From positions 1 to 64,000 of the IMG/VR virus record IMGVR_UViG_3300032307_000369: a stretch of DNA of 64,000 bases; one strand, written 5' to 3'. The position numbers were made by a program, and so were the translations under genes. Shown here piece after piece: positions 376 to 58,863 of the stretch. Numbering within the stretch: position 1 is the stretch's first letter; each line of letters opens with the position of its first letter. Under the pieces are notes generated by a model that worked only from the letters and a program-made list of their open reading frames with translations, ran no database searches and had not been told where the DNA came from.

Positions 376-448
376 GGGGTGACTAACGGGGTTCGAACCC
401 GTACAAAGAGAATCACAATCTCTGATGCTACCATTACATCATAGTCAC
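376..448 (-). tRNA. tRNA-His(GTG), no encoded G-1, incomplete CCA
   Basis: Cloverleaf GTGACTA/TAGTCAC, anticodon arm AGAGA-ttGTGat-TCTCT, T arm ACGGG-TTCGAAC-CCCGT, C73 followed by CCT. Confidence 0.88.
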
Positions 449-454
449 ACCTAA

Positions 455-655
455 TAAGTCTTATGTAGGCTACGAGTTTCCAGCTCGCCCCTACTTGAGT
501 TGCTCACCCTGTCACTGCGTTTTGATGTCTTAATAGTTGCAGTTCTATCCAGCGGTTCGGGAAAACATTTATGTTAACCTACCTTTTCGGGTCACCGCCC
601 CCGACCTATGACGCCAGGCTAGCGACACCGATAACATTCGGTGCTGACGGGATTC
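455..655 (-). ncRNA. Candidate ~200-nt structured ncRNA between tRNA-Arg and tRNA-His
   Basis: Multiple helices: GCACCGA/UCGGUGU, GCGGU/ACCGC enclosing two hairpins, CUGC/GCAG, GUAGG-GGCGAG/CUCGU-AGCCUAC. No ORF with a start codon and SD. Confidence 0.5.
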
Positions 656-730
656 TGGCGCGGCGGATAGGAGTCGAACCTACATAAGACACTTTAGAAG
701 AGTGTTGCCTTTCCATTAGACTACCGCCGC
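656..730 (-). tRNA. tRNA-Arg(TCT)
   Basis: GCGGCGG acceptor strand, anticodon arm ACACT-ctTCTaa-AGTGT, TTCGACT loop, encoded CCA. Confidence 0.95.
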
Positions 731-738
731 ATTACTTT

Positions 739-746
739 TATAAATA
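739..746 (+). promoter_or_regulatory. T4-like late promoter TATAAATA
   Basis: Exact TATAAATA 20 nt upstream of ORF 767. Confidence 0.6.
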
Positions 747-766
747 TTGATTATTAAGGGGACTTC

Positions 767-1369
767 ATGATTACTTCAATTTTTCCAAACAAAGTGTTAA
801 TTAAAGACTTTGATTTGAGTGACGAGTGGAACAACAATGTTACAGCAATAGTAAAAGCCATATTTGCCAAAGAGTTGGCAGAAAGAGGCGATTATGCTGC
901 CGCCGGAAATGACAGTATTTCTGTGTTCACTGAAGAAAACATGAAAGTTTGCCCAGAACTTGTAGAACTAAGACAAATGTTTGTAGACTGCTTTTATGAG
1001 TTGGCTAGTTCATATACTACTAACAAACTCACAAAAGAAGACATTGAACAACGTGTTAGAAAAGATTTAGGTCGTTTACCCTTTATGAAAAAGAATGATT
1101 TCAAACGTGTTCATAATCATGATTCCATGGTAGATGCCTTTGCAATCTTTTATCTAACAGATTTAGATAATGAAAAAGATGGTGGAGAATTAATTCTACA
1201 TGATCCAAGTTTTTCTGGAGTGTTCAACTTCCATGAAAAAAGAACATTTGGTATTGCCACTAAAAAACATAGAATGGTCATTTGCCCAAACCATATTTGG
1301 CATGAAGTGTCAATGTACACTGGCGAAAAAGAACGTGCCACTATTGTGTTAAATCTTAACGCCATATAA
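767..1369 (+). CDS. 2OG-Fe(II) oxygenase, TIGR02466-like
   Basis: HNHD...AIFYL, GGELILHDP, P..WHEV..Y.G..ER motifs; SD AAGGGG. Confidence 0.8.
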   Translation: MITSIFPNKVLIKDFDLSDEWNNNVTAIVKAIFAKELAERGDYAAAGNDSISVFTEENMKVCPELVELRQMFVDCFYELASSYTTNKLTKEDIEQRVRKDLGRLPFMKKNDFKRVHNHDSMVDAFAIFYLTDLDNEKDGGELILHDPSFSGVFNFHEKRTFGIATKKHRMVICPNHIWHEVSMYTGEKERATIVLNLNAI

Positions 1370-1370
1370 T

Positions 1371-1455
1371 TGGTACCCCTCCTCGGATTCGAACCGAGAA
1401 ACCTACGGCACTCCTTTTGAGAGAGCTGACTTTACCAAAATTTGTCCAGAGGGGC
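1371..1455 (-). tRNA. tRNA-Leu(CAA)
   Basis: GCCCCTC/GAGGGGT, anticodon loop ctCAAaa, long variable arm, CCA. Confidence 0.92.
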
Positions 1456-1464
1456 ATATTGAAT

Positions 1465-1680
1465 TTGTTGCAGTAGTTCCACCATCGTTATTGGAACCAT
1501 TCACCTGGATTAACTAGCCCGGGCAGGACTCGGTACGTCACTTGGGATACTTAACCAGCGTAGCAACCAATCTGCGAGGATCTTCCGATCCTCTGGGAGT
1601 TGAACCCATTTGCCTTCTACTATATCAGTCCTTCGAAGAAACCTCTATAGCGTGTTGTTCTCTTGCTGACACTACAACAA
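1465..1680 (-). ncRNA. ~216-nt structured RNA containing a circularly permuted tRNA-like module (Y-RNA/YrlA-like)
   Basis: 10-bp closing stem UUGUUGUAGU/ACUGCAACAA. Internal order: T arm (UGGG-UUCAACU-CCCA), 7-bp hairpin GAGGAUC-GGAA-GAUCCUC, D-like arm GCA-GAUUGGU-UGC. Confidence 0.6.
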
Positions 1681-1684
1681 AACT

Positions 1685-1759
1685 TGGTGCCCCAGGATGG
1701 AATCGAACCACCACACCCTGCTTACAAAACAGGACCTCTACCACTAAGGATACAAGGGC
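1685..1759 (-). tRNA. tRNA-Thr(TGT)
   Basis: Anticodon arm CCTGT-ttTGTaa-GCAGG, TTCGATT loop, CCA. Confidence 0.93.
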
Positions 1760-1765
1760 TAAAAT

Positions 1766-1841
1766 TGGTCTCCCTACTAGGATTCGAACCTAGACCACAC
1801 GGCCCCAAACCGCGGATGCAACCAGGTAACACTTTAGAGAG
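1766..1841 (-). tRNA. tRNA-Pro(TGG)
   Basis: CTCTCTA/TAGGGAG, anticodon arm CGCGG-ttTGGgg-CCGTG, CCA. Confidence 0.93.
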
Positions 1842-1848
1842 ATATAAT

Positions 1849-1943
1849 TGGCGGAAAGCAGAGGAGTCGAACCCCACCCGGCTCATCACCAGGACCCAGT
1901 TTTCAAGGCTGGTCGGGGAACCAACTCCCCTGCATTACTTTCC
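1849..1943 (-). tRNA. tRNA-Ser(TGA) with atypical D arm
   Basis: GGAAAGT/GCTTTCC, G73, loop ctTGAaa, long variable arm, D arm GGGGAG-TTGG-TTCCCC, CCA. Confidence 0.85.
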
Positions 1944-1949
1944 ATAACT

Positions 1950-2023
1950 TGGCGTACCTCCAGGGACTCGAACCCCGACGAACAGTTTTGGAGACTGTCA
2001 TGCTGCCATTACATTAGAGATAC
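1950..2023 (-). tRNA. tRNA-Trp(CCA)
   Basis: Anticodon arm ACAGT-ctCCAaa-ACTGT, G73, CCA. Confidence 0.94.
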
Positions 2024-2029
2024 ATTAAT

Positions 2030-2107
2030 TGGAGTACGGGGTCGGATTTGAACCGACGGTTTTACGGATTTGCAATCCGATGCAATGGGCCGCTCTGCCA
2101 CCCGTAC
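2030..2107 (-). tRNA. tRNA-Cys(GCA)
   Basis: GTACGGG/CCCGTAC, U73, loop ttGCAaa, CCA. Confidence 0.93.
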
Positions 2108-2118
2108 ATAAATTAATT

Positions 2119-2193
2119 TGGTGGTAAAGGTGAGATTCGAACTCACACCGGGCACCGTATGAAGGTGTTGCACAACCATTATGCTACTTTACC
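2119..2193 (-). tRNA. tRNA-CAT (elongator Met or Ile2; not fMet)
   Basis: G1-C72 paired, loop ttCATac, A73, CCA; no three consecutive G-C pairs in the anticodon stem. Confidence 0.88.
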
Positions 2194-2194
2194 A

Positions 2195-2297
2195 TATAGA
2201 AACATACTCCGCAGGAATTGAACCTGCCTACCCGGGAATGTCCCGAGCTGTAATCCGCTACATCTGCTTGGCCTAAGCATTTGAATATGTTTTTATA
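2195..2297 (-). ncRNA. tRNA-like element lacking a 7-nt anticodon loop and CCA
   Basis: T arm GCAGG-UUCAAUU-CCUGC, D-like arm UGCUU-AGGCC-AAGCA, UGUAG-CGGA-UUACA arm, variable arm CGGGA/UCCCG, ~15-bp closing stem. Confidence 0.6.
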
Positions 2298-2371
2298 TGG
2301 TAGGGGCACAGAGAATCGAACTCTGATTTACGGGTTAAAAGCCCGCTACTTTACCATTAAGTTATACCCCC
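2298..2371 (-). tRNA. tRNA-Lys(TTT)
   Basis: Anticodon arm GCGGG-ctTTTaa-CCCGT, TTCGATT loop, CCA. Confidence 0.94.
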
Positions 2372-2400
2372 ATCATCTTACCACTCTTGTCACTTTCCAT
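2362..2400 (-). CDS. 12-aa mini-ORF MESDKSGKMMGV ending inside tRNA-Lys
   Basis: SD AAAGGAG 7 nt before ATG; the last codons and TAA lie in the tRNA-Lys acceptor and D region. Confidence 0.4.
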   Translation of the reverse strand: MESDKSGKMMGV

Positions 2401-2444
2401 GACAGATCTCCTTTTTAAAGTTAAATTTTATTCATAAATACAAG

Positions 2445-2681
2445 ATGACACGTTTATATGCTTATCATTGTATAAAGAAATTTGTAACATTCTTTCCTAC
2501 ACCAGTATTTTTAATACTGTCTTTGTGTAGTATTTTTTATTTTGGTCCTCCTATGTGCGGAGGATTTGCTTACGAAATGGCACTAATGTGGTTTCTTATG
2601 GCACTAGCACATGCAAGACCTTGGATTGAATACATTGAAATCAAACGCTGTCCTAACGGATGCGGTTGCCACACTGAATAA
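2445..2681 (+). CDS. Small membrane protein with Cys/His-rich tail
   Basis: Two hydrophobic stretches, MCG and CPNGCGCH motifs; ATAAATA late-type motif just upstream. Confidence 0.6.
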   Translation: MTRLYAYHCIKKFVTFFPTPVFLILSLCSIFYFGPPMCGGFAYEMALMWFLMALAHARPWIEYIEIKRCPNGCGCHTE

Positions 2682-2684
2682 ACT

Positions 2685-2758
2685 TGGCAGAGGGTACTGG
2701 GATCGAACCAGTGATGACAGAGTCAAAGTCTGTAGTGTTACCGCTACACCAACCCCCA
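2685..2758 (-). tRNA. tRNA-Gln(TTG)
   Basis: Anticodon arm ACAGA-ctTTGac-TCTGT, U1, G73, CCA. Confidence 0.92.
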
Positions 2759-2766
2759 ACAAAACC

Positions 2767-2842
2767 TGGTGCTACCTGTAGGAATCGAACCTACTTCAAC
2801 GGTGCTTCAAACCGCCGCTATGACCACATCAGCTAAAGTAGC
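2767..2842 (-). tRNA. tRNA-Phe(GAA)
   Basis: GCTACTT/AGGTAGC, anticodon arm GCGGT-ttGAAgc-ACCGT, CCA. Confidence 0.92.
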
Positions 2843-2843
2843 A

Positions 2844-2920
2844 TGGCCGGCCCTGAGAGACTCGAACTCCCAACCTCTAGTTTCGAAGACTAGCACTCTA
2901 ATCCATTGAGTTAAGGACCG
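2844..2920 (-). tRNA. tRNA-Arg(TCG)
   Basis: CGGTCCT/AGGGCCG, anticodon arm CTAGT-ctTCGaa-ACTAG, CCA. Confidence 0.93.
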
Positions 2921-2928
2921 TAAAACTT

Positions 2929-3003
2929 TGGTACCCGAAGCAAGATTTGAACTTGCGACCAACGGCTTATCAAGCCGCTGCTCTACCACTGAGCTATCCG
3001 GGT
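2929..3003 (-). tRNA. tRNA-Ile(GAT)
   Basis: Anticodon arm GCGGC-ttGATaa-GCCGT, A73, CCA. Confidence 0.94.
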
Positions 3004-3011
3004 AAATTGCT

Positions 3012-3074
3012 AAGGGACACATTCTAATGTTGTTTGAGACTGAGCTGGGGGTCTGTGTTCAGCAAGTCTCCCTT
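3012..3074 (-). ncRNA. Structured spacer (three-way junction candidate)
   Basis: AAGGGA/UCCCUU closing stem, GAGACU/AGUCUC with GCUG/CAGC, and ACAUU/AAUGU. Confidence 0.35.
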
Positions 3075-3079
3075 CTAAC

Positions 3080-3155
3080 TGGCGCCGTGGACGGGAATCG
3101 AACCCGCCTAAATCGGATAGACAATCCGGTGCTCTACCCAGAGAACTACCACGGC
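3080..3155 (-). tRNA. tRNA-Asp(GTC)
   Basis: GCCGTGG/CCACGGC, loop ttGTCta, G73, CCA. Confidence 0.92.
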
Positions 3156-3162
3156 ATATAAC

Positions 3163-3244
3163 GTAAGGCTATGCGAGCTCATCTGCATACTTAGGCTTTT
3201 TGTCTTCTCCTGCCCGGGCAGTTACGACTGTAGCGTCACCTTAT
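3163..3244 (-). ncRNA. Structured spacer RNA
   Basis: UAAGG/CCUUA closing stem, UGCCC/GGGCA palindrome, UAUGC/GCAUA hairpin. Confidence 0.35.
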
Positions 3245-3247
3245 GAT

Positions 3248-3322
3248 TGGCATCCTGCACGGGTATCGATCCCGTTCCTACACCTTGAAAGGGTGTTGAT
3301 CTAGCCAGTAATCTAGCAGGAT
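3248..3322 (-). tRNA. tRNA-Glu(TTC), A54 T-loop variant
   Basis: ATCCTGC/GCAGGAT, anticodon arm ACACC-ctTTCaa-GGTGT, T-loop ATCGATA, CCA. Confidence 0.9.
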
Positions 3323-3328
3323 ATAATT

Positions 3329-3414
3329 TGGTGGAGCCGGTTGGACTTGAACCAACAATGCACGGGGGCGGCGGATTTACAGTCCACTGGGGTTACCAAT
3401 TTTCCTACGACTCC
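3329..3414 (-). tRNA. tRNA-Tyr(GTA)
   Basis: GGAGTCG/CGGCTCC, loop ctGTAaa, long variable arm, CCA. Confidence 0.94.
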
Positions 3415-46835: not shown

Positions 46836-47372
46836 ATGCGAGCAAAAGAATTTATACTAGAAGCAGAAGCCAGTGATACTGAGTTAAAACAACGTTGGGG
46901 TGACTTTTCTCCAGAAGACAAGCCTATGCTTCCACAAACACGAGTTGGAGGTGCTCCTGCACCCACACTATGGACAGCATACAGTGTTATCCAAAACATT
47001 TTAGGTCGAAATCGAGTAACTGATGACGATGACGAACTAGAGCCTGGAATGTACTATGTTTATCAAAGTAATGAATCTCCAATGTTTAAGGATACCGGAG
47101 ACGGAGTTGGTAGTATAAATTTACCTAATTTAGATAGCACTGCGGCACGTGACGTTGCCACGGCAGCACACGAAGCTTACCATGCTTATGTACACAATAA
47201 GAGTCAGGGTGGCTTTGCTCATGCTAACGAAAAAATTATTAACAACCTAGCAGAAAAATGGTTAAGAAATCATTTATCTGGACCAGCTTTACATGTCGCA
47301 CTTGAAACAATAGTGGGCAGTAAAATTAGTTATGGTCCAAACCATATGCCTAAACCAGGAACTAAAAAATGA
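46836..47372 (+). CDS. Late protein with HExxH motif; possible head-packaged protein
   Basis: TTAAATA immediately upstream; MRAKEFILE N-terminus; AAHEAYH; start reset from 46767. Confidence 0.6.
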   Translation: MRAKEFILEAEASDTELKQRWGDFSPEDKPMLPQTRVGGAPAPTLWTAYSVIQNILGRNRVTDDDDELEPGMYYVYQSNESPMFKDTGDGVGSINLPNLDSTAARDVATAAHEAYHAYVHNKSQGGFAHANEKIINNLAEKWLRNHLSGPALHVALETIVGSKISYGPNHMPKPGTKK

Positions 47373-49414
47373 ATATTAAAAAAATATTATTAAGCCCTTG
47401 GACTGCCTTACTAACTCTAGCATTAGTAGTAGGTATACGTATAGCAGATCCTACATTTGTTGAAAGTGTAAGACTACGCTACTTTGACACGTTAATTACT
47501 GCCAAAGAACCAACTTTTAACAACATCGTAACTGTAAATATTGATGAAGCGAGTTTAGACAAATATGGACAATGGCCGTTGCCTCGTGCTGAGTATTCCC
47601 GACTTGTACGAGATTTATATCAGAGGGGAGCAGGGCTTGTTGTACTTAATGTGCTCATGCCAGAACCAGACCGTACAGGTGGCGACAATTCGCTGGGTCA
47701 AACTTTAAAAGAATTTCCTGTAGTACTAGGGTCAGTACCTAGTAATAAAACAAAAAATACACCAAGAGTTCCAGGCAGTGCAGTGCTAGGGCCAGAACAT
47801 TTAGATCAAATTATTCAATATCCTGGACTTATAGCCAACGTTCCGCAGTTAGAAAACTCAGCGGCTGGTGTAGGAATAGTATCAACACTACCTGAAGTAG
47901 ACGGTGTTAATCGTAGACTACCTCTTATCGTTACTGTTGACGGTAAACTTTATCCAAGCATAGCTATGGAAACACTCCGCGTTGCGGCTGGCGATAGCAC
48001 TTTTCAAGTAAAACTATTTGAAGGTGGTGTTGAAAAAATGCGTATACCTACATTTGGTCCTGTTACTACAGACAACTTAGGTCGTATATGGATTGATTGG
48101 AGCCAACAAAATCGTAGCTTCAGTTTAACCACATTACCAAAAGATTTAGAGGGAGCCATTGTTATTGTTGGTCCAACGGCTGCTGGCATTGGTAATCCAG
48201 TACCAACAAGTAAGGGCGCAGTATGGCCACATGAAGTACAAGCCGCAGTTATAGGCACTATGGTAAACGGTGTTGTTATTCAACGTCCTGATTATGCAGA
48301 CGGTGCTGAAATTATAGCGTTGTTGGCTTTTGGTTTACTATTAATTTTATTGTCAAGGTGGACTTATGTTGGAATTATTTCTACTGTGGTTATTATTGGT
48401 GCCGTCGTTCCTGGTACTTTCTACGCTTTCAATAATTGGCTCATCTTGGGAGACGCGACTGCGATCTCGTTTGGCCTTATTATCATTGCTCTTCATACTT
48501 ACGGCGTTAAGTTTGTAAGTGAGTTCTTACAGAAACAGGCAATTAAGAAACAGTTTGAAGGATATGCAAGTCCTACAGTAGTTAAACTGTTACAGGAAAA
48601 TCCAGACATCATCAAGAACGGAACAAAGCGTGAAGTTTCTATTGTATTTTCAGACTTACGTGGCTTCACACCCTTAGGTGAAAGTTTTGGTGATGATGTT
48701 AAAGGTCTAACAGAAGTTATGAATGGCTACATGGATGCTATCACACAACCTGTACTAGATGCAGATGGCATGATTATCAAGTATATTGGTGATGCAAGTA
48801 TGCACATACACAATGCTCCTATTGATGATCCGCATCATGCTAAAACAGCCGTGGCTACAGGACTTAAGATGTTAAAGGCTGTTAAACAGTTTAGTATTGA
48901 GTTGGAAGCTAAAGGTCGTCCAGGTGTTAAGATGGGTGCTGGCATCAATACTGGACTAGGCTATATTGGCGAAATGGGTTCAACCAAGCGTCATTCATAT
49001 GATGTCTTAGGTGATGCAGTGTCAACTGCCGCACGTATTGAAAGCAAATGTAAAGAGTACGGCTGTGTATTACTGGTTGGGGGTGCTACTGTAGAACAAT
49101 GCGGTGATGATTTCTTCTTCTTAAAAGTAGACGACCTAGCTGTTAAGGGTAAGAGTGTTGGGGTTGCTATCTATACAGTGTTAGATGATGTCACTGCTGA
49201 ATATCATGTGGCTAAAAAGATACATGATGCCATGCATAGTGCGTATAGATCACAAAAATTTAGCACAGCTATCAATATGTGCAAACAACTTAGAGATCAA
49301 TTTGACGGAAGATTGAGCGGCTACTACGATATGTGGATAGAACGCTGTGAGTTTCAGTTAACACAAACGTTACCAAAAGATTGGAACGGCGTGTTTATAG
49401 CAACTTCAAAATAA
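47369..49414 (+). CDS. CHASE2-domain class III adenylate cyclase
   Basis: IDE.SL..YGQWP.PR, CHASE2 plus 3 TM; VFSDLRGFT, KYIGDA, YDVLGDAVSTAARIE. Confidence 0.93.
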   Translation: MNIKKILLSPWTALLTLALVVGIRIADPTFVESVRLRYFDTLITAKEPTFNNIVTVNIDEASLDKYGQWPLPRAEYSRLVRDLYQRGAGLVVLNVLMPEPDRTGGDNSLGQTLKEFPVVLGSVPSNKTKNTPRVPGSAVLGPEHLDQIIQYPGLIANVPQLENSAAGVGIVSTLPEVDGVNRRLPLIVTVDGKLYPSIAMETLRVAAGDSTFQVKLFEGGVEKMRIPTFGPVTTDNLGRIWIDWSQQNRSFSLTTLPKDLEGAIVIVGPTAAGIGNPVPTSKGAVWPHEVQAAVIGTMVNGVVIQRPDYADGAEIIALLAFGLLLILLSRWTYVGIISTVVIIGAVVPGTFYAFNNWLILGDATAISFGLIIIALHTYGVKFVSEFLQKQAIKKQFEGYASPTVVKLLQENPDIIKNGTKREVSIVFSDLRGFTPLGESFGDDVKGLTEVMNGYMDAITQPVLDADGMIIKYIGDASMHIHNAPIDDPHHAKTAVATGLKMLKAVKQFSIELEAKGRPGVKMGAGINTGLGYIGEMGSTKRHSYDVLGDAVSTAARIESKCKEYGCVLLVGGATVEQCGDDFFFLKVDDLAVKGKSVGVAIYTVLDDVTAEYHVAKKIHDAMHSAYRSQKFSTAINMCKQLRDQFDGRLSGYYDMWIERCEFQLTQTLPKDWNGVFIATSK

Positions 49415-50780: not shown

Positions 50781-50855
50781 CTGGCGATAGTTCAACGGAT
50801 AGAACAGTAGCCTTCTAAGCTATTAATCCAGGTTCGATTCCTGGTCGCCGGACCA
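50781..50855 (+). tRNA. tRNA-Arg(TCT), second copy
   Basis: CTGGCGA/TCGCCGG, anticodon arm GTAGC-ctTCTaa-GCTAT, CCA. Confidence 0.94.
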
Positions 50856-50872: not shown

Positions 50873-51706
50873 ATGAAAATTAACCTAGTCAGTGACATGC
50901 ACATCAACTTTCAAGATATTAACTTGCCAGGTGGTGATGTGCTCATTATGGCTGGTGATATCATGGAAGCTGGGCATCTACGTCTTGCTGACAATGCTAA
51001 AAAGAATACTTTTATTGCAGACCGGTACCGTAGATTCATCAATGAAGAATTAATCAAATACCGTCATGTGATCTACGTTGCGGGTAATCACGAACATTAT
51101 AGTAACAGCTATGACGATACTCACGATAGACTAAAACGTGAATTGCCTGACAACGTGCATTTTTTAGAAGCAGAATCAATCAAGATTGATGATGTATGGT
51201 TCTTTGGTGGCACGTTTTGGACTGACATGAACAAGGGTGATCCTATTACTGCCAGTGTGTTAAAACAAAACATGGCTGACTTCAGTGGGTCTATCAAATT
51301 TGGTAATAGTATTCGTGTTGATACCATGTACGGTGATAGTTTTTACACCAGTAAATTCACTCCAGCGTATGCCAAGGGCGTGTTTCACGAAACAATGGAA
51401 AAATTGAAAACTTTTTTAGAAGCTCACCCTGATGAAAAAGTTGTTGTAGTAAGTCATCATGCACCAACAGAGTTGAGTGTTAATGAATACTACAAAAATG
51501 AATTCCATATGAATGGTGGATACCATAGTCGATTGGGTGATTTTATTTTAGATCATCCTAATATCAAAGTATGGTGCCATGGTCACATGCACGATCCGGT
51601 TGATTACACTATAGGCACAACTCGTGTGCTGAGTAACCCACGTGGTTATAAAGGATATGAGCAACAAGCTGAAGTGTTTGATCCTAATTTTAGTTTTGAC
51701 GTATAA
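50873..51706 (+). CDS. Calcineurin-like metallophosphoesterase
   Basis: SDMH, AGD, GNHE, SHHAP, HGHMH. Confidence 0.9.
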   Translation: MKINLVSDMHINFQDINLPGGDVLIMAGDIMEAGHLRLADNAKKNTFIADRYRRFINEELIKYRHVIYVAGNHEHYSNSYDDTHDRLKRELPDNVHFLEAESIKIDDVWFFGGTFWTDMNKGDPITASVLKQNMADFSGSIKFGNSIRVDTMYGDSFYTSKFTPAYAKGVFHETMEKLKTFLEAHPDEKVVVVSHHAPTELSVNEYYKNEFHMNGGYHSRLGDFILDHPNIKVWCHGHMHDPVDYTIGTTRVLSNPRGYKGYEQQAEVFDPNFSFDV

Positions 51707-53536: not shown

Positions 53537-53653
53537 ATAAAATACTATGAAGACAACAGCATATCAATTTGCATCCAATAAGAAGATTCCTTCTTCCGTT
53601 GTCTACTTGTCTTTAATCCCACGAATACGATTACAACACTCTTAAAAAGTTAA

Positions 53654-53754
53654 GGGAGTGTTGCTAATATTGGCCTAAGGGCAGAGCTTATACCTCTGTA
53701 AGCACCGTCTAGATAAGGCGGCGAATGTGGGTTCGATTCCCGCCACTCCTACCA
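53654..53754 (+). tRNA. tRNA with TAT anticodon (nominally Ile) and a 28-nt variable region
   Basis: GGGAGTG/CACTCCT, A73, CCA; anticodon arm CAGAG-ctTATac-CTCTG; V-arm CCGTCT-agata-AGGCGG; T arm GTGGG-TTCGATT-CCCGC. Confidence 0.8.
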
Positions 53755-53760
53755 AACATT

Positions 53761-53845
53761 GCCTGCATGGTGAAATAGGTAAACACAGCAGACTTAAAAT
53801 CTGCCGGAGAAATCCTTCCCAGTTCGATTCTGGGTGCAGGCACCA
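53761..53845 (+). tRNA. tRNA-Leu(TAA)
   Basis: GCCTGCA/TGCAGGC, anticodon arm GCAGA-ctTAAaa-TCTGC, CCA. Confidence 0.94.
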
Positions 53846-53852
53846 AATACAG

Positions 53853-53881
53853 TTGACAAAGATAACAAAAACATATATAAT
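53853..53881 (+). promoter_or_regulatory. Consensus sigma70 promoter
   Basis: TTGACA-N17-TATAAT. Confidence 0.8.
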
Positions 53882-57546: not shown

Positions 57547-57989
57547 AACAAGAGTTGGACGAACAACTATGTACCAAGTACCCTAAGATATTTGTAAACC
57601 GTCATGAAGACATGACTACTACTGCTATGTGTTGGGGCTTTGGTTGTGGCGATGGATGGTATCAAATACTTGACAGTCTTTGCAGTCAAATTCAACACCA
57701 CATTGATTGGAACAACAGTAACTTTGATAAAGGTTATACTCAATACAAACAAGTTCCGCAAGTGGTTGTTGATCAAGTCAAAGAAAAATTTGGTGGGTTA
57801 CGTTTTTATTACCAAGGTGGTGATGACTACATTCACGGACTAGTTAGCATGGCAGAATCTTGGGCAGTTAACACTTGTGAAGAGTGTGGATCGTCTGGAA
57901 AGATTCGACATGGCGGATGGATCAAAACTCTTTGTGATAAGCACGAAGAAGAGCGGCAACAACGATATAAAGAACGATTCGATGTTTAA
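57543..57989 (+). CDS. Hypothetical phage protein
   Basis: CG.GW, QVKEKFGGLRFY, CE.CG...C motifs. Confidence 0.75.
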   Translation: MKQELDEQLCTKYPKIFVNRHEDMTTTAMCWGFGCGDGWYQILDSLCSQIQHHIDWNNSNFDKGYTQYKQVPQVVVDQVKEKFGGLRFYYQGGDDYIHGLVSMAESWAVNTCEECGSSGKIRHGGWIKTLCDKHEEERQQRYKERFDV

Positions 57990-58863
57990 AGAAGACTTAA
58001 AGAAGTATGTAGAAACTTCTAACCTAGTTAACATGAAAGAGTGTGGTGACGGTATCTACGTGCTAAAGTACAAGAAGAAAGTGTTCTACGATAACTTGTG
58101 GAACGAATACATTGCTGAATGTCGTGGCTCTATTGTGGACAAGGATTTCAACTTGGTTGCTTATCCATTCACAAAGATCTACAACTATGGTATTGAAAAG
58201 GAAGCACCAGTGCTTGCTCCAGATACTAAGGTAACTGCTTTCCGCAAGGTTAACGGTTTTATGGTTGCTTGTACATTGCATAACGGCAAACTGTTAGTGA
58301 GTACTACTGGTAGCACAGACAGCGACTATGTAAACATGGCACGTGAACTGATTGACGAAGCAAAGTACTTAGACTTGTGCTCACGTTGGGCAGGTTATAC
58401 ATTTATGTTTGAGTGCGTTCATCGTAACGACCCACACATTGTTCCTGAAAAGGAAGGTATGTATGTCCTAGGCTATCGTGAAAATAAATGGCACACTCCT
58501 GTAGAACATGATCCGTTCATGTTAATGGAAATGAGTCGTGTGTTAGATTGTTTTGTGCCAGAAAGCATAATGACCAATATGGCACGTTTACAACAGTTGG
58601 CTAAGGAATGTAAGCATGAAGGTTATGTATTCTATACTGACGATGGTGTAAGTGCCAAAATCAAGAGCCCTTACTATTTGACTTCAAAGTGGGTTGCCCG
58701 AAATCCGCGCACAGACAAATTGGTGAACTTGCAAAATGACATCAAGCACAATCTTGACGAAGAATACTATCCACTCGTGGATGCTATCCGTGCTAACATT
58801 GTTGAATACACTGCTATGGACGAGCAAGCTCGACTAGCCTGGGTAAGGGAACAATTGGCATGA
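57982..58863 (+). CDS. RNA ligase, T4 Rnl1-like
   Basis: ECRG, PF.KIYNY, KVNG (motif I), FEC, EGYV, KIKSPYY; start reset to ATG 57982. Confidence 0.85.
   Translation: MFKEDLKKYVETSNLVNMKECGDGIYVLKYKKKVFYDNLWNEYIAECRGSIVDKDFNLVAYPFTKIYNYGIEKEAPVLAPDTKVTAFRKVNGFMVACTLHNGKLLVSTTGSTDSDYVNMARELIDEAKYLDLCSRWAGYTFMFECVHRNDPHIVPEKEGMYVLGYRENKWHTPVEHDPFMLMEMSRVLDCFVPESIMTNMARLQQLAKECKHEGYVFYTDDGVSAKIKSPYYLTSKWVARNPRTDKLVNLQNDIKHNLDEEYYPLVDAIRANIVEYTAMDEQARLAWVREQLA

What the first reader, a model, noticed from the sequence alone, without database searches (positions are those of the whole stretch)
53654..53754. Class II (long-arm) tRNA with a UAU anticodon next to two tRNA-Leu(UAA) genes
Seen: a 101-nt tRNA with anticodon UAU, A73, a weak D stem and a 28-nt variable region with a 6-bp helix, 6 nt upstream of tRNA-Leu(UAA). 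Established: bacteria usually read AUA with lysidine-modified tRNA-Ile2(CAU), and Ile tRNAs have short variable loops. A73 plus a long arm is the Leu-type body, and LeuRS largely ignores the anticodon. UAU differs from UAA at one position. Inference: either a TilS-independent AUA decoder or a Leu-charged tRNA that mistranslates AUA (and possibly AUG).
Basis: partly seen in the sequence, partly recalled or inferred. Interest (0 to 1): 0.65.

Follow-up and report, generated by a model that had tools for sequence, protein, structure and literature searches.

The report
Phage tRNA with two isoleucine anticodon arms
The flagged 101-base gene is a real, strongly conserved transfer RNA from a large and apparently undescribed family on phages and plasmids; it carries a normal-looking UAU anticodon arm (for the rare isoleucine codon AUA) plus a second arm that copies the anticodon loop of ordinary isoleucine tRNA, which may let the host's charging enzyme accept it.

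Summary
Window 53654-53754 is a tRNA gene: Rfam tRNA 38.7 bits (threshold 29), A73, encoded CCA, 6 nt before tRNA-Leu(UAA). ARAGORN misses it.

It is not a one-off. Pattern scans found over 100 viral contigs, cultured E. coli, Klebsiella, Pectobacterium, Vibrio and Synechococcus phages, and Xanthomonas plasmids with homologues. I parsed 97 unique sequences.

All share two anticodon-sized hairpins:
- Arm 1 has a canonical loop, Y-U-UAU-A-N.

Acceptor, arm 1, arm 2 and T stems all show compensatory changes.

The extra arm tracks the UAU anticodon. Among 117 phage tRNAs sharing one D arm, 25 of 27 UAU tRNAs carry it. None of the 90 others has such an arm.

In the window's subtype the D-stem 5' strand pairs better with an "AGC" just before arm 2 (52/52) than with the copy before arm 1 (13/52 for pair 10-25). 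Two overlapping cloverleaves therefore exist.

Best reading: an Ile-accepting, TilS-independent AUA decoder. Its second arm keeps the IleRS anticodon determinants that UAU lacks. The Leu-mischarging idea is not supported. Charging and decoding remain untested.

The parts
53654..53754 (+). whole tRNA gene (98 nt + encoded CCA)
   Evidence: Rfam tRNA 38.7 bits; 100% conserved in L003/L004/L005; family membership
53654..53660 (+). acceptor stem 5' strand GGGAGUG; pairs with 53744-53750 (CACUCCU)
   Evidence: In the family all 7 pairs show compensatory changes and 99.7% of cells are paired
53663..53666 (+). D-stem 5' strand GCUA (positions 10-13)
   Evidence: Can pair with copy 1 (53677-53680) or copy 2 (53700-53703)
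53677..53680 (+). copy 1 of the D-stem 3' strand, degenerate (AAGG)
   Evidence: Gives only 2 pairs with GCUA. The 10-25 pair forms in 13/52 long-form members
53682..53698 (+). arm 1: CAGAG-CUUAUAC-CUCUG; canonical anticodon loop, UAU at 53689-53691
   Evidence: All five stem pairs covary. The UUAUA loop is invariant in scans that did not require it
53700..53703 (+). copy 2 of the D-stem 3' strand (AAGC), followed by A at 53704
   Evidence: G10-C 52/52, C11-G 52/52, U12-A 51/52 plus one C-G compensatory change. Rfam uses this pairing
53705..53721 (+). arm 2: CCGUC-UAGAUAA-GGCGG; Ile(GAU)-type anticodon loop with A33, GAU at 53712-53714
   Evidence: The inner 3 pairs are 100% paired with compensatory changes. 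The loop is YAGAUWA in every member, including those found by scans that did not require it. The window's own tRNA-Ile(GAU) loop is UUGAUAA
53722..53726 (+). 5-nt linker CGAAU (the length of a class I variable loop); its last base behaves like position 48
   Evidence: D-loop AAU-A-UUGG goes with ...AAU and AAU-G-UUGG with ...AAC in all type-2 members
53727..53743 (+). T arm GUGGG-UUCGAUU-CCCGC
   Evidence: 100% paired in the family; 2 pairs covary
53751..53754 (+). discriminator A73 and encoded CCA
   Evidence: A73 in 95 of 96 parsed members; CCA encoded in most
53761..53845 (+). tRNA-Leu(UAA), neighbour
   Evidence: ARAGORN; Rfam 59.5 bits
53905..53988 (+). second tRNA-Leu(UAA), preceded by a perfect sigma-70-like promoter at 53853-53881
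50781..50855 (+). tRNA-Arg(UCU); reads another A-ending codon the phage uses heavily

Best explanation
This is a functional tRNA of a widespread phage and plasmid family, and it most likely decodes the isoleucine codon AUA with an unmodified-type UAU anticodon (arm 1). That would spare the element any dependence on the host's scarce lysidine-modified tRNA-Ile2 and on TilS.

The family probably arose from a tRNA-Ile(GAU) by tandem duplication of the segment [D-stem 3' strand + position 26 + anticodon arm]. The upstream copy became the UAU arm. The downstream copy (arm 2) has been kept as a 5-bp/7-nt arm with loop Y-A-G-A-U-W-A. That loop holds IleRS anticodon-loop determinants (G34, A35, U36, A38, usually A37) but has A33, which should disable it for decoding.

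The proposed role of arm 2 is to give host IleRS the anticodon determinants that a UAU anticodon lacks. The RNA would be charged with Ile while arm 2 sits in the anticodon-arm position (fold B) and would decode AUA with arm 1 in that position (fold A). Fold B uses the D-stem 5' strand paired with the conserved 'AGC' before arm 2.

What is shown and what is inferred:
- Shown: the gene, the family, the covariation, the two alternative cloverleaves, and the specific coupling of arm 2 to UAU.
- Inferred: AUA decoding, Ile charging, and the role of arm 2 in IleRS recognition.
For: 1. It is a real tRNA. Rfam scores it above threshold. It is 100% conserved while flanks diverge. Every stem covaries across 52 aligned members. 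A Levitt-pair-like covariation links the D loop to the last linker base.
2. Arm 1 has the canonical Y32-U33-NNN-A37 loop with invariant UAU. ARAGORN calls the short-linker subtype tRNA-Ile(tat) in 71/71 loci.
3. The loop of arm 2 differs from the window's own tRNA-Ile(GAU) loop only at position 33.
4. The coupling is specific. In a scan keyed only on a common D arm, 25 of 27 UAU tRNAs carry the YAGAUWA arm. None of the 90 tRNAs with other anticodons has such an arm; one shows a chance match to the motif outside any arm.
5. Wild-type E. coli IleRS charges a UAU-anticodon tRNA-Ile2 360-fold less efficiently than the LAU form (PMC3575796). This gives a reason to add the determinants.
6. In the window's subtype the pairs G10-C, C11-G and U12-A with the copy before arm 2 form in 52/52 members, with one C-G compensation. 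The 10-25 pair with the copy before arm 1 forms in only 13/52. Computed energies of folds A and B differ by only 1-3 kcal/mol. Deleting either arm in silico gives a tRNA that ARAGORN calls, in 52/52 cases each way.
7. There is demand for it. The phage is 37.5% GC and uses ATA for 20% of Ile codons. The gene sits with tRNA-Arg(UCU) and two tRNA-Leu(UAA) genes, which serve AGA (45% of Arg) and UUA (39% of Leu). A separate tRNA-Ile(GAU) is present here and in 31 of 59 large arrays that hold a family member.
Against:
- Several subtypes (type 1, the CAGAUUA group, the cyanophage copy) have no second D-strand copy. A formal fold B is unavailable to them, yet they keep loop 2, so the switch cannot be universal in this form.
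- In those forms arm 2 sits where a variable arm sits, and IleRS is not expected to reach it there.
- A third of unbiased members have U at position 37 of loop 2, so t6A37, an E. coli IleRS determinant, cannot form there.
- Why A33 is invariant is not explained by IleRS recognition alone.
- On E. coli ribosomes an unmodified UAU anticodon also read AUG (PMC3575796). That cost is not addressed.
- B. subtilis can live on a plain tRNA-Ile(UAU) mutant (abstract of PMC3919564, listed), and 2 plain phage UAU tRNAs were found. The extra arm is therefore not strictly required everywhere.
Confidence: 0.42

Rival explanations
1. It is an AUA-decoding tRNA-Ile(UAU) in a single class II-like fold (fold A). 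Arm 2 serves something other than IleRS recognition: recruiting or blocking a modification enzyme, stabilising the core, protecting against a nuclease, or limiting AUG misreading.
For: Fold A is the only cloverleaf available to type 1, the CAGAUUA group and the cyanophage copy, and ARAGORN accepts it. The ribosome tolerates long variable arms, as class II tRNAs show. The coupling to UAU demands a UAU-related role but does not say which.
Against: It does not explain three things. The conserved loop letters match the Ile(GAU) anticodon loop. The 3' linker always has class I variable-loop length (4-6 nt). In the window's subtype a second D-strand copy pairs 52/52 while the first copy has decayed.
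Confidence: 0.22
2. It is not mainly a translation adaptor. It acts as a decoy or inhibitor for a host anticodon nuclease or another tRNA-targeting defence aimed at tRNA-Ile. It would display two Ile anticodon loops, one of them (A33) possibly uncleavable.
For: Phage tRNA arrays are thought to counter tRNA-cleaving defences (general knowledge). A T4 Rnl1-like RNA ligase (57877-58863) and a metallophosphatase (50873-51706) lie nearby. The Stenotrophomonas copy lies beside a Gabija-like island. Invariant A33 is odd for a decoding loop.
Against: Near-invariant A73, the encoded CCA, perfect acceptor covariation and the Levitt-type pair point to selection for aminoacylation. Placement among tRNAs for the A-ending codons the phage uses heavily, together with the phage's codon usage, fits supply. 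No Ile-specific nuclease is known to me in these hosts.
Confidence: 0.13
3. Fold B is the working form. It would be a tRNA-Ile(GAU, A33) that reads AUC/AUU, and the UAU hairpin would be an extra arm projecting from the D loop with some other role.
For: Rfam's best alignment is this one. The D' pairing forms in 52/52 members. The junction linkers (2 nt, 1 nt, 5 nt, 0 nt) are exactly those of a class I tRNA.
Against: A33 in place of the near-universal U33 should impair decoding. The phage and many arrays already carry a normal tRNA-Ile(GAU). Many relatives cannot form fold B. It leaves the invariant canonical UAU loop, and the coupling to it, unexplained.
Confidence: 0.1
4. This is the first reader's second option: LeuRS charges it (A73 plus a long arm), so it inserts Leu at AUA and possibly AUG, as nematode nev-tRNA-Ile(UAU) is charged with Leu in vitro.
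For: A73 and a long extra arm are present. Bacterial LeuRS ignores the anticodon (general knowledge). There is a precedent in nev-tRNAs (PMC3333845). The gene is adjacent to tRNA-Leu genes.
Against: The body is not Leu-like: most members have a 4-bp class I D arm, the extra arm has a 7-nt Ile loop with long linkers, and only 1-2 of 96 members are nearest to Leu tRNAs. The family is conserved in AT-rich elements that use AUA heavily (978 ATA codons in this phage), where Leu misincorporation would be costly. Loop 2 conserves Ile determinants, not Leu ones.
Confidence: 0.08

Closest known systems
TilS-independent bacterial tRNA-Ile(UAU) ('Ile3'; Mycoplasma mobile, Bifidobacterium, Neorickettsia; B. 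subtilis suppressor mutants)
   Same: It has a UAU anticodon in a canonical loop, A73, and the presumed job of reading AUA without lysidine (PMC3575796; PMC8450103).
   Different: Those are ordinary class I tRNAs of about 75 nt. In M. mobile the adaptation lies in IleRS (Arg865). Here the host enzyme is presumably unchanged, and the tRNA carries an extra Ile(GAU)-like arm.
Class II tRNAs (bacterial Leu, Ser, Tyr)
   Same: There is an extra base-paired arm between the anticodon arm and the T arm. The total length is 90-101 nt.
   Different: - The extra arm has anticodon-arm dimensions (5 bp, 7-nt loop) with a conserved sequence.
- The 3' linker is 4-6 nt rather than 1-2 nt.
- Most members have a 4-bp class I D arm.
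- The anticodon matches none of the class II amino acids.
Nematode nev-tRNAs (class II tRNAs with Gly or Ile(UAU) anticodons, charged with Leu)
   Same: They combine a long-arm tRNA with a UAU anticodon, so the anticodon and the body type seem to disagree (PMC3333845).
   Different: nev-tRNAs derive from tRNA-Leu and keep Leu determinants. This family looks derived from tRNA-Ile, and its extra arm keeps Ile anticodon determinants. It is also found on bacterial mobile elements, not in eukaryotic nuclei.
allo-tRNAs and other non-canonical cloverleaf tRNAs of bacteria and phages (PMC5389517)
   Same: They are unusual tRNA architectures found by mining genomes and metagenomes, some of them on phages.
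   Different: allo-tRNAs are defined by 8/4 or 9/3 acceptor/T stems. This family has the canonical 7/5 arrangement and differs by a duplicated anticodon arm.

Membership tests
tRNA (Rfam RF00005) | Score at or above the curated gathering threshold (29 bits) over the full-length model | tested here: met
   38.7 bits, model positions 1-71, E = 1.4e-6
tRNA (Rfam RF00005) | 7-bp acceptor stem, 5-bp T stem with a UUCRANY loop, and G18G19 in the D loop, all supported by covariation | tested here: met
   Acceptor stem 99.7% paired with all 7 pairs covarying. T stem 100% paired. GG invariant
tRNA (Rfam RF00005) | A single anticodon arm with a 7-nt loop, U33 and a purine at 37 | tested here: inconclusive
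   There are two candidate arms. Arm 1 meets the rule (CUUAUAC). Arm 2 has A33 (UAGAUAA). Rfam picks arm 2, and ARAGORN picks arm 1 in relatives
Class II (long variable arm) tRNA of the Leu type | Variable arm longer than 10 nt that forms a stem | tested here: met
   28 nt between arm 1 and the T stem, with a 5-6-bp helix
Class II (long variable arm) tRNA of the Leu type | Leu-like body: the D arm and extra arm of bacterial tRNA-Leu, and closest sequence relatives among Leu tRNAs | tested here: not met
   Only 1-2 of 96 members are nearest to Leu after masking the loops. The extra arm has a 7-nt Ile-type loop and a 4-6-nt 3' linker
Class II (long variable arm) tRNA of the Leu type | Aminoacylation by LeuRS | not testable with these tools
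   Needs an in vitro charging assay
TilS-independent tRNA-Ile(UAU) | UAU anticodon in a canonical anticodon loop, with A73 | tested here: met
   CUUAUAC at 53687-53693; A73 at 53751. Both are conserved family-wide
TilS-independent tRNA-Ile(UAU) | Ordinary class I cloverleaf of about 75 nt | tested here: not met
   98 nt with an extra arm. Only 2 of the 27 UAU tRNAs in the unbiased scan are plain
TilS-independent tRNA-Ile(UAU) | Charged with Ile and reads AUA | not testable with these tools
A codon-meaning test on orthologue columns had too few ATA sites
nev-tRNA-like 'anticodon/body mismatch' tRNAs | Phylogenetic derivation from tRNA-Leu with Leu determinants retained | tested here: not met
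   arm 2 is an Ile(GAU) loop

The most novel reading that the evidence does not exclude
This may be a bistable 'two-headed' tRNA: one RNA that encodes two overlapping cloverleaves sharing the acceptor stem, the T arm and the D-stem 5' strand. By swapping the D-stem partner, or the coaxial stacking in its five-way junction, it would present the GAU-type arm to IleRS for charging and the UAU arm to the ribosome for decoding. In effect this separates synthetase identity from codon reading. A stronger version is that both arms decode, so a single gene covers all three Ile codons. Mobile elements would use it to obtain AUA decoding from an unmodified host IleRS without TilS.
Probability: 0.2. Interest if true: 0.9.

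Novelty: new variant of a known kind. Interest (0 to 1): 0.72.

Why it matters
AUA is the hardest sense codon for bacteria to read. It normally needs an essential enzyme (TilS) and a scarce tRNA. A plain UAU anticodon is a poor substrate for E. coli IleRS (PMC3575796).

A family found in more than 100 viral contigs, in cultured phages and on Xanthomonas plasmids, in which the UAU anticodon almost always travels with a second Ile(GAU)-like anticodon arm, suggests a natural RNA-level answer to that problem. If arm 2 really supplies synthetase identity, several things follow:
- It would be a natural example of uncoupling tRNA identity from the anticodon, which is of direct use for genetic-code engineering, where AUA is a favoured target codon.
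- It would add a new tRNA architecture.
- It would explain why tRNA finders either miss these genes or give conflicting anticodons. ARAGORN missed the window's subtype in 48 of 51 loci and called the Xanthomonas form as a nested Ile(gat).

Even on the conservative reading, phage and plasmid annotations need correcting.

Tried and rejected
- ARAGORN with introns allowed and with lowered thresholds gave only artefactual calls: a nested Ile(gat), a Gln(ctg) with a 5-nt 'intron', and a reverse-strand Asp.
- The single-sequence MFE fold predicts a competing 7-bp hairpin (GCUUAUA/UGUAAGC) that is not conserved in relatives, so I rejected it.
- Of 80 relatives of the downstream 276-aa gene, only 3 loci carry tRNAs at this position. 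Synteny therefore gave little.
- I tested the meaning of ATA through orthologue alignment columns. There were only 61 observations at variable sites, so the test was uninformative.
- Nearest-isotype comparison gave scattered results. They argue against a Leu origin but cannot prove an Ile origin. Some Ile(gat) hits were nested self-calls.
- Nearest-neighbour energies cannot choose between folds A and B.
- The 15-mer scan for the type-2 D region returned mostly chance hits. Only the 29 true tRNAs among them were used.
No read evidence was obtained, and I did not pursue it by other tools.
- Six literature searches found no description of this family. The library is incomplete, so absence there is weak evidence.
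- There is no homologue in complete E. coli genomes and no IleRS/LeuRS-type synthetase gene (PF00133) in the held part of the phage record.
- I considered and set aside intramolecular kissing between loop 2 (AUAA) and loop 1 (UUAU). The complementarity is inherent to any Ile loop, the geometry is unfavourable, and the CAGAUUA variants weaken it.
- A pseudogene is rejected by the conservation and covariation.

Full report
**The object.** Window 53654-53754 (+) reads as follows:
- acceptor GGGAGUG
- UU
- GCUA-AUAUUGGCCU-AAGG-G
- arm 1: CAGAG-CUUAUAC-CUCUG
- UAAGCA
- arm 2: CCGUC-UAGAUAA-GGCGG
- CGAAU
- T arm: GUGGG-UUCGAUU-CCCGC
- CACUCCU-A-CCA

ARAGORN finds 19 tRNAs in the window and in the whole 245,550-bp IMG/VR phage record, but not this one. 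Relaxed settings give only artefacts.

Rfam's tRNA model does hit it above threshold (38.7 bits against 29), but with a different alignment. It pairs the D stem as GCU/AGC using the 'AAGC' at 53700-53703. It takes CCGUC-UAGAUAA-GGCGG as the anticodon arm (GAU, with A at position 33). It reads CGAAU as a normal 5-nt variable loop, and it treats the UAU hairpin as part of a 31-nt insertion in the D loop.

Two cloverleaves therefore compete:
- Fold B is Rfam's: class I, with the GAU arm in the anticodon position.

**It is conserved.** Two related IMG/VR contigs carry the 101 nt unchanged. The flanking ORFs, spacers and the second tRNA-Leu are only 79-97% identical.

**It belongs to a large family.**
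- A relative of the downstream gene (L077) has a 92-nt gene followed by tRNA-Leu(UAA). ARAGORN calls that gene tRNA-Ile(tat).
- A pattern built from what the two share (UUAUA ... AGAUAA ... AUGUNGGUUCGA) hit at least 109 viral contigs. I estimated that under one hit would be expected by chance.
- BLAST found homologues in cultured phages of E. coli, Klebsiella, Pectobacterium, Vibrio and Synechococcus. Some are annotated tRNA-Ile of 95-102 nt and others are unannotated.
- The same pattern found about 30 Xanthomonadales genomes, some Pasteurellaceae genomes and a few metagenome-assembled genomes.
- The Xanthomonas-type copy is patchy: 8 of 201 genomes of that family. It is present at about 100% identity on 38 Xanthomonas plasmids. 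In one Stenotrophomonas chromosome it lies beside a KfrA/Gabija-like island. It is therefore a gene of mobile elements.

I parsed 97 unique sequences.

**Shared anatomy.** All members have these features:
- a 7-bp acceptor stem, A73 in 95 of 96, usually an encoded CCA, and a canonical T arm
- arm 1: a 5-bp stem and the loop Y-U-U-A-U-A-N
- arm 2: a stem of about 5 bp and the loop Y-A-G-A-U-W-A
- a 4-6-nt linker to the T stem

I aligned 52 long-linker members and counted pairs:

| Helix | Cells paired | Covariation |
|---|---|---|
| Acceptor stem | 99.7% | all 7 pairs show compensatory changes |
| Arm 1 | 85% | all 5 pairs covary; the 31-39 pair is an A.C or C.A mismatch in 37/52 |
| Arm 2 (inner 3 pairs) | 100% | all covary |
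| T stem | 100% | 2 pairs covary |

A D-loop purine covaries with the last linker base: A goes with U and G with C. This behaves like the 15-48 Levitt pair and argues for a tRNA-like tertiary fold.

**Are the conserved loops just a product of how I searched?** No. A scan keyed only on the type-2 D region recovered 29 true members, and all have UUAUA and AGAUAA. A scan keyed only on a D arm common to many phage tRNAs gave 117 unique tRNAs:
- 27 have a UAU loop. Of these, 25 carry the extra arm (CAGAUAA 15, CAGAUUA 9, UAGAUAA 1) and 2 are plain class I.
- 90 have other anticodons. None has such an arm; one shows a chance match to the motif outside any arm.

The extra arm is thus specifically coupled to the UAU anticodon. 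Its loop differs from the anticodon loop of the window's own tRNA-Ile(GAU) (UUGAUAA, 2929-3003) only at position 33.

**Fold A or fold B?** In the long-linker subtypes the D-stem 5' strand (10-13) can pair either with a copy before arm 1 or with a second copy ('AGC') just before arm 2. These subtypes include the window's 'type 2', the Xanthomonas type, and L148.

| Pair | Second copy (fold B) | First copy (fold A) |
|---|---|---|
| G10-C | 52/52 | 13/52 |
| C11-G | 52/52 | 50/52 |
| U12-A | 51/52, plus one C-G compensation (Rhodanobacter) | 44/52, plus 3 U-G and one C-G |

- Position 13 covaries with the second copy (C-G, U-A, G-C, A-U).
- In the Xanthomonas type both copies give 4 bp.
- The repeated unit [AGC + N + 5-bp/7-nt arm] points to an origin by tandem duplication of the D 3' strand plus anticodon arm of a tRNA-Ile(GAU).
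- Computed energies of the two folds differ by only 1-3 kcal/mol.
- Deleting either arm in silico gives a sequence that ARAGORN calls at default settings: tRNA-Ile(tat) in 52/52 and tRNA-Ile(gat) in 52/52.

However, type 1, the CAGAUUA group and the cyanophage copy have no second copy. They can form only fold A, yet they keep loop 2. The window's subtype adds a well-supported alternative D pairing.

**Function.**
- Arm 1 has every mark of a decoding loop. Arm 2 has A33, which is very rare in working anticodon loops (general knowledge).
- The phage is 37.5% GC. It uses ATA for 20% of Ile, TTA for 39% of Leu and AGA for 45% of Arg. The cluster here supplies tRNAs for exactly those codons: Arg(UCU), the UAU tRNA, and two Leu(UAA).
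- A separate tRNA-Ile(GAU) exists in this genome and in 31 of 59 large arrays that hold a family member. The gene is therefore not a redundant AUC/AUU reader.

The most likely job is AUA decoding.

**Which amino acid?**
- A73 fits both Ile and Leu.
- The body is not Leu-like.
- The conserved letters of loop 2 (G34, A35, U36, A38, often A37) are known E. coli IleRS anticodon-loop determinants (general knowledge, Nureki et al. 1994).
- Wild-type E. coli IleRS charges a UAU-anticodon tRNA 360-fold less well than the lysidine form (PMC3575796).

I therefore propose that arm 2 is kept to give host IleRS the determinants that UAU lacks, with the alternative D pairing or stacking placing arm 2 in the anticodon position during charging. 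This last step is inference. It is weakened by the subtypes that lack the second D copy, by the U37 variants, and by the unexplained need for A33.

**Rivals.**
- A single-fold AUA decoder whose extra arm has another role.
- A nuclease decoy. An Rnl1-like ligase and a phosphatase lie nearby.
- A GAU(A33) tRNA with an extra arm projecting from the D loop.

**Novelty.** Six literature searches and readings of the tRNAscan-SE 2.0, M. mobile and nev-tRNA papers turned up no description of a UAU tRNA with a second Ile-type anticodon arm. Some GenBank records simply label these genes tRNA-Ile. I class the finding as a new variant of a known kind.

Noticed in passing
window 53853-53881 (+): A perfect sigma-70 consensus promoter (TTGACA, 17 nt, TATAAT; 12/12) sits between the two tRNA-Leu(UAA) genes. 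A very similar element precedes the tRNA-Leu in L077 and L003. The second Leu gene seems to have its own strong promoter.
   Followed up: partly
window 53620-53667: The leader CAACACUCUUAA...UUAAGGGAGUGUUG can form a hairpin of about 12 bp that sequesters the 5' acceptor strand of the odd tRNA. It is conserved in L003/L004 (spacer 96.6% identical). It may be a processing or folding element.
   Followed up: no
window 57877-58863 and 50873-51706: A T4 Rnl1-type RNA ligase (PF09511) and a calcineurin-like metallophosphatase flank the tRNA cluster. This suggests a tRNA-repair module against anticodon nucleases.
   Followed up: no
window 47369-49414: A phage-encoded CHASE2 sensor domain fused to an adenylate/guanylate cyclase domain (681 aa).
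   Followed up: no
window 376-3414 (-): An array of 16 tRNA genes lies at the start of the record. It includes tRNA-Ile(GAU) and one tRNA(CAU) with a G1-C72 pair (so not an initiator). Whether that one is an elongator Met or an Ile2 tRNA was not resolved.
   Followed up: partly
L306, L330 and 38 Xanthomonas plasmids (e.g. NZ_CP023286.1 149042-149141): A 100-nt member of the same family is carried at about 100% identity on conjugative or mobilisable Xanthomonas plasmids and in a few Xanthomonadales chromosomes (8 of 201 sampled). In it both D-strand copies are intact (GCUC with GAGC and GAGC). It is unannotated in the plasmid tables. ARAGORN calls a nested 73-nt Ile(gat) instead.
   Followed up: partly
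L061 8075-8149; L324 7487-7562: A relative of this jumbo phage carries a tRNA with a CUA anticodon, which ARAGORN labels 'Pyl' (a possible amber suppressor). An Actinobacillus locus has a tRNA-like gene with a 4-base anticodon call (ctaa).
   Followed up: no
L373, L416, L435, L415, L442: Several phage tRNA-like genes with the common D arm UAGUUUAAUGGUAAAAC and the acceptor strand AGUAUAG have long insertions after the D arm. These are unclassified odd tRNAs or intron-bearing genes.
   Followed up: no
arm 1 of family members (alignment A1, columns 33/41): The 31-39 pair closing the UAU loop is an A.C or C.A mismatch in 37 of 52 long-form members and in most of type 1. The window's copy has G-C. 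This may tune AUA/AUG discrimination.
   Followed up: no
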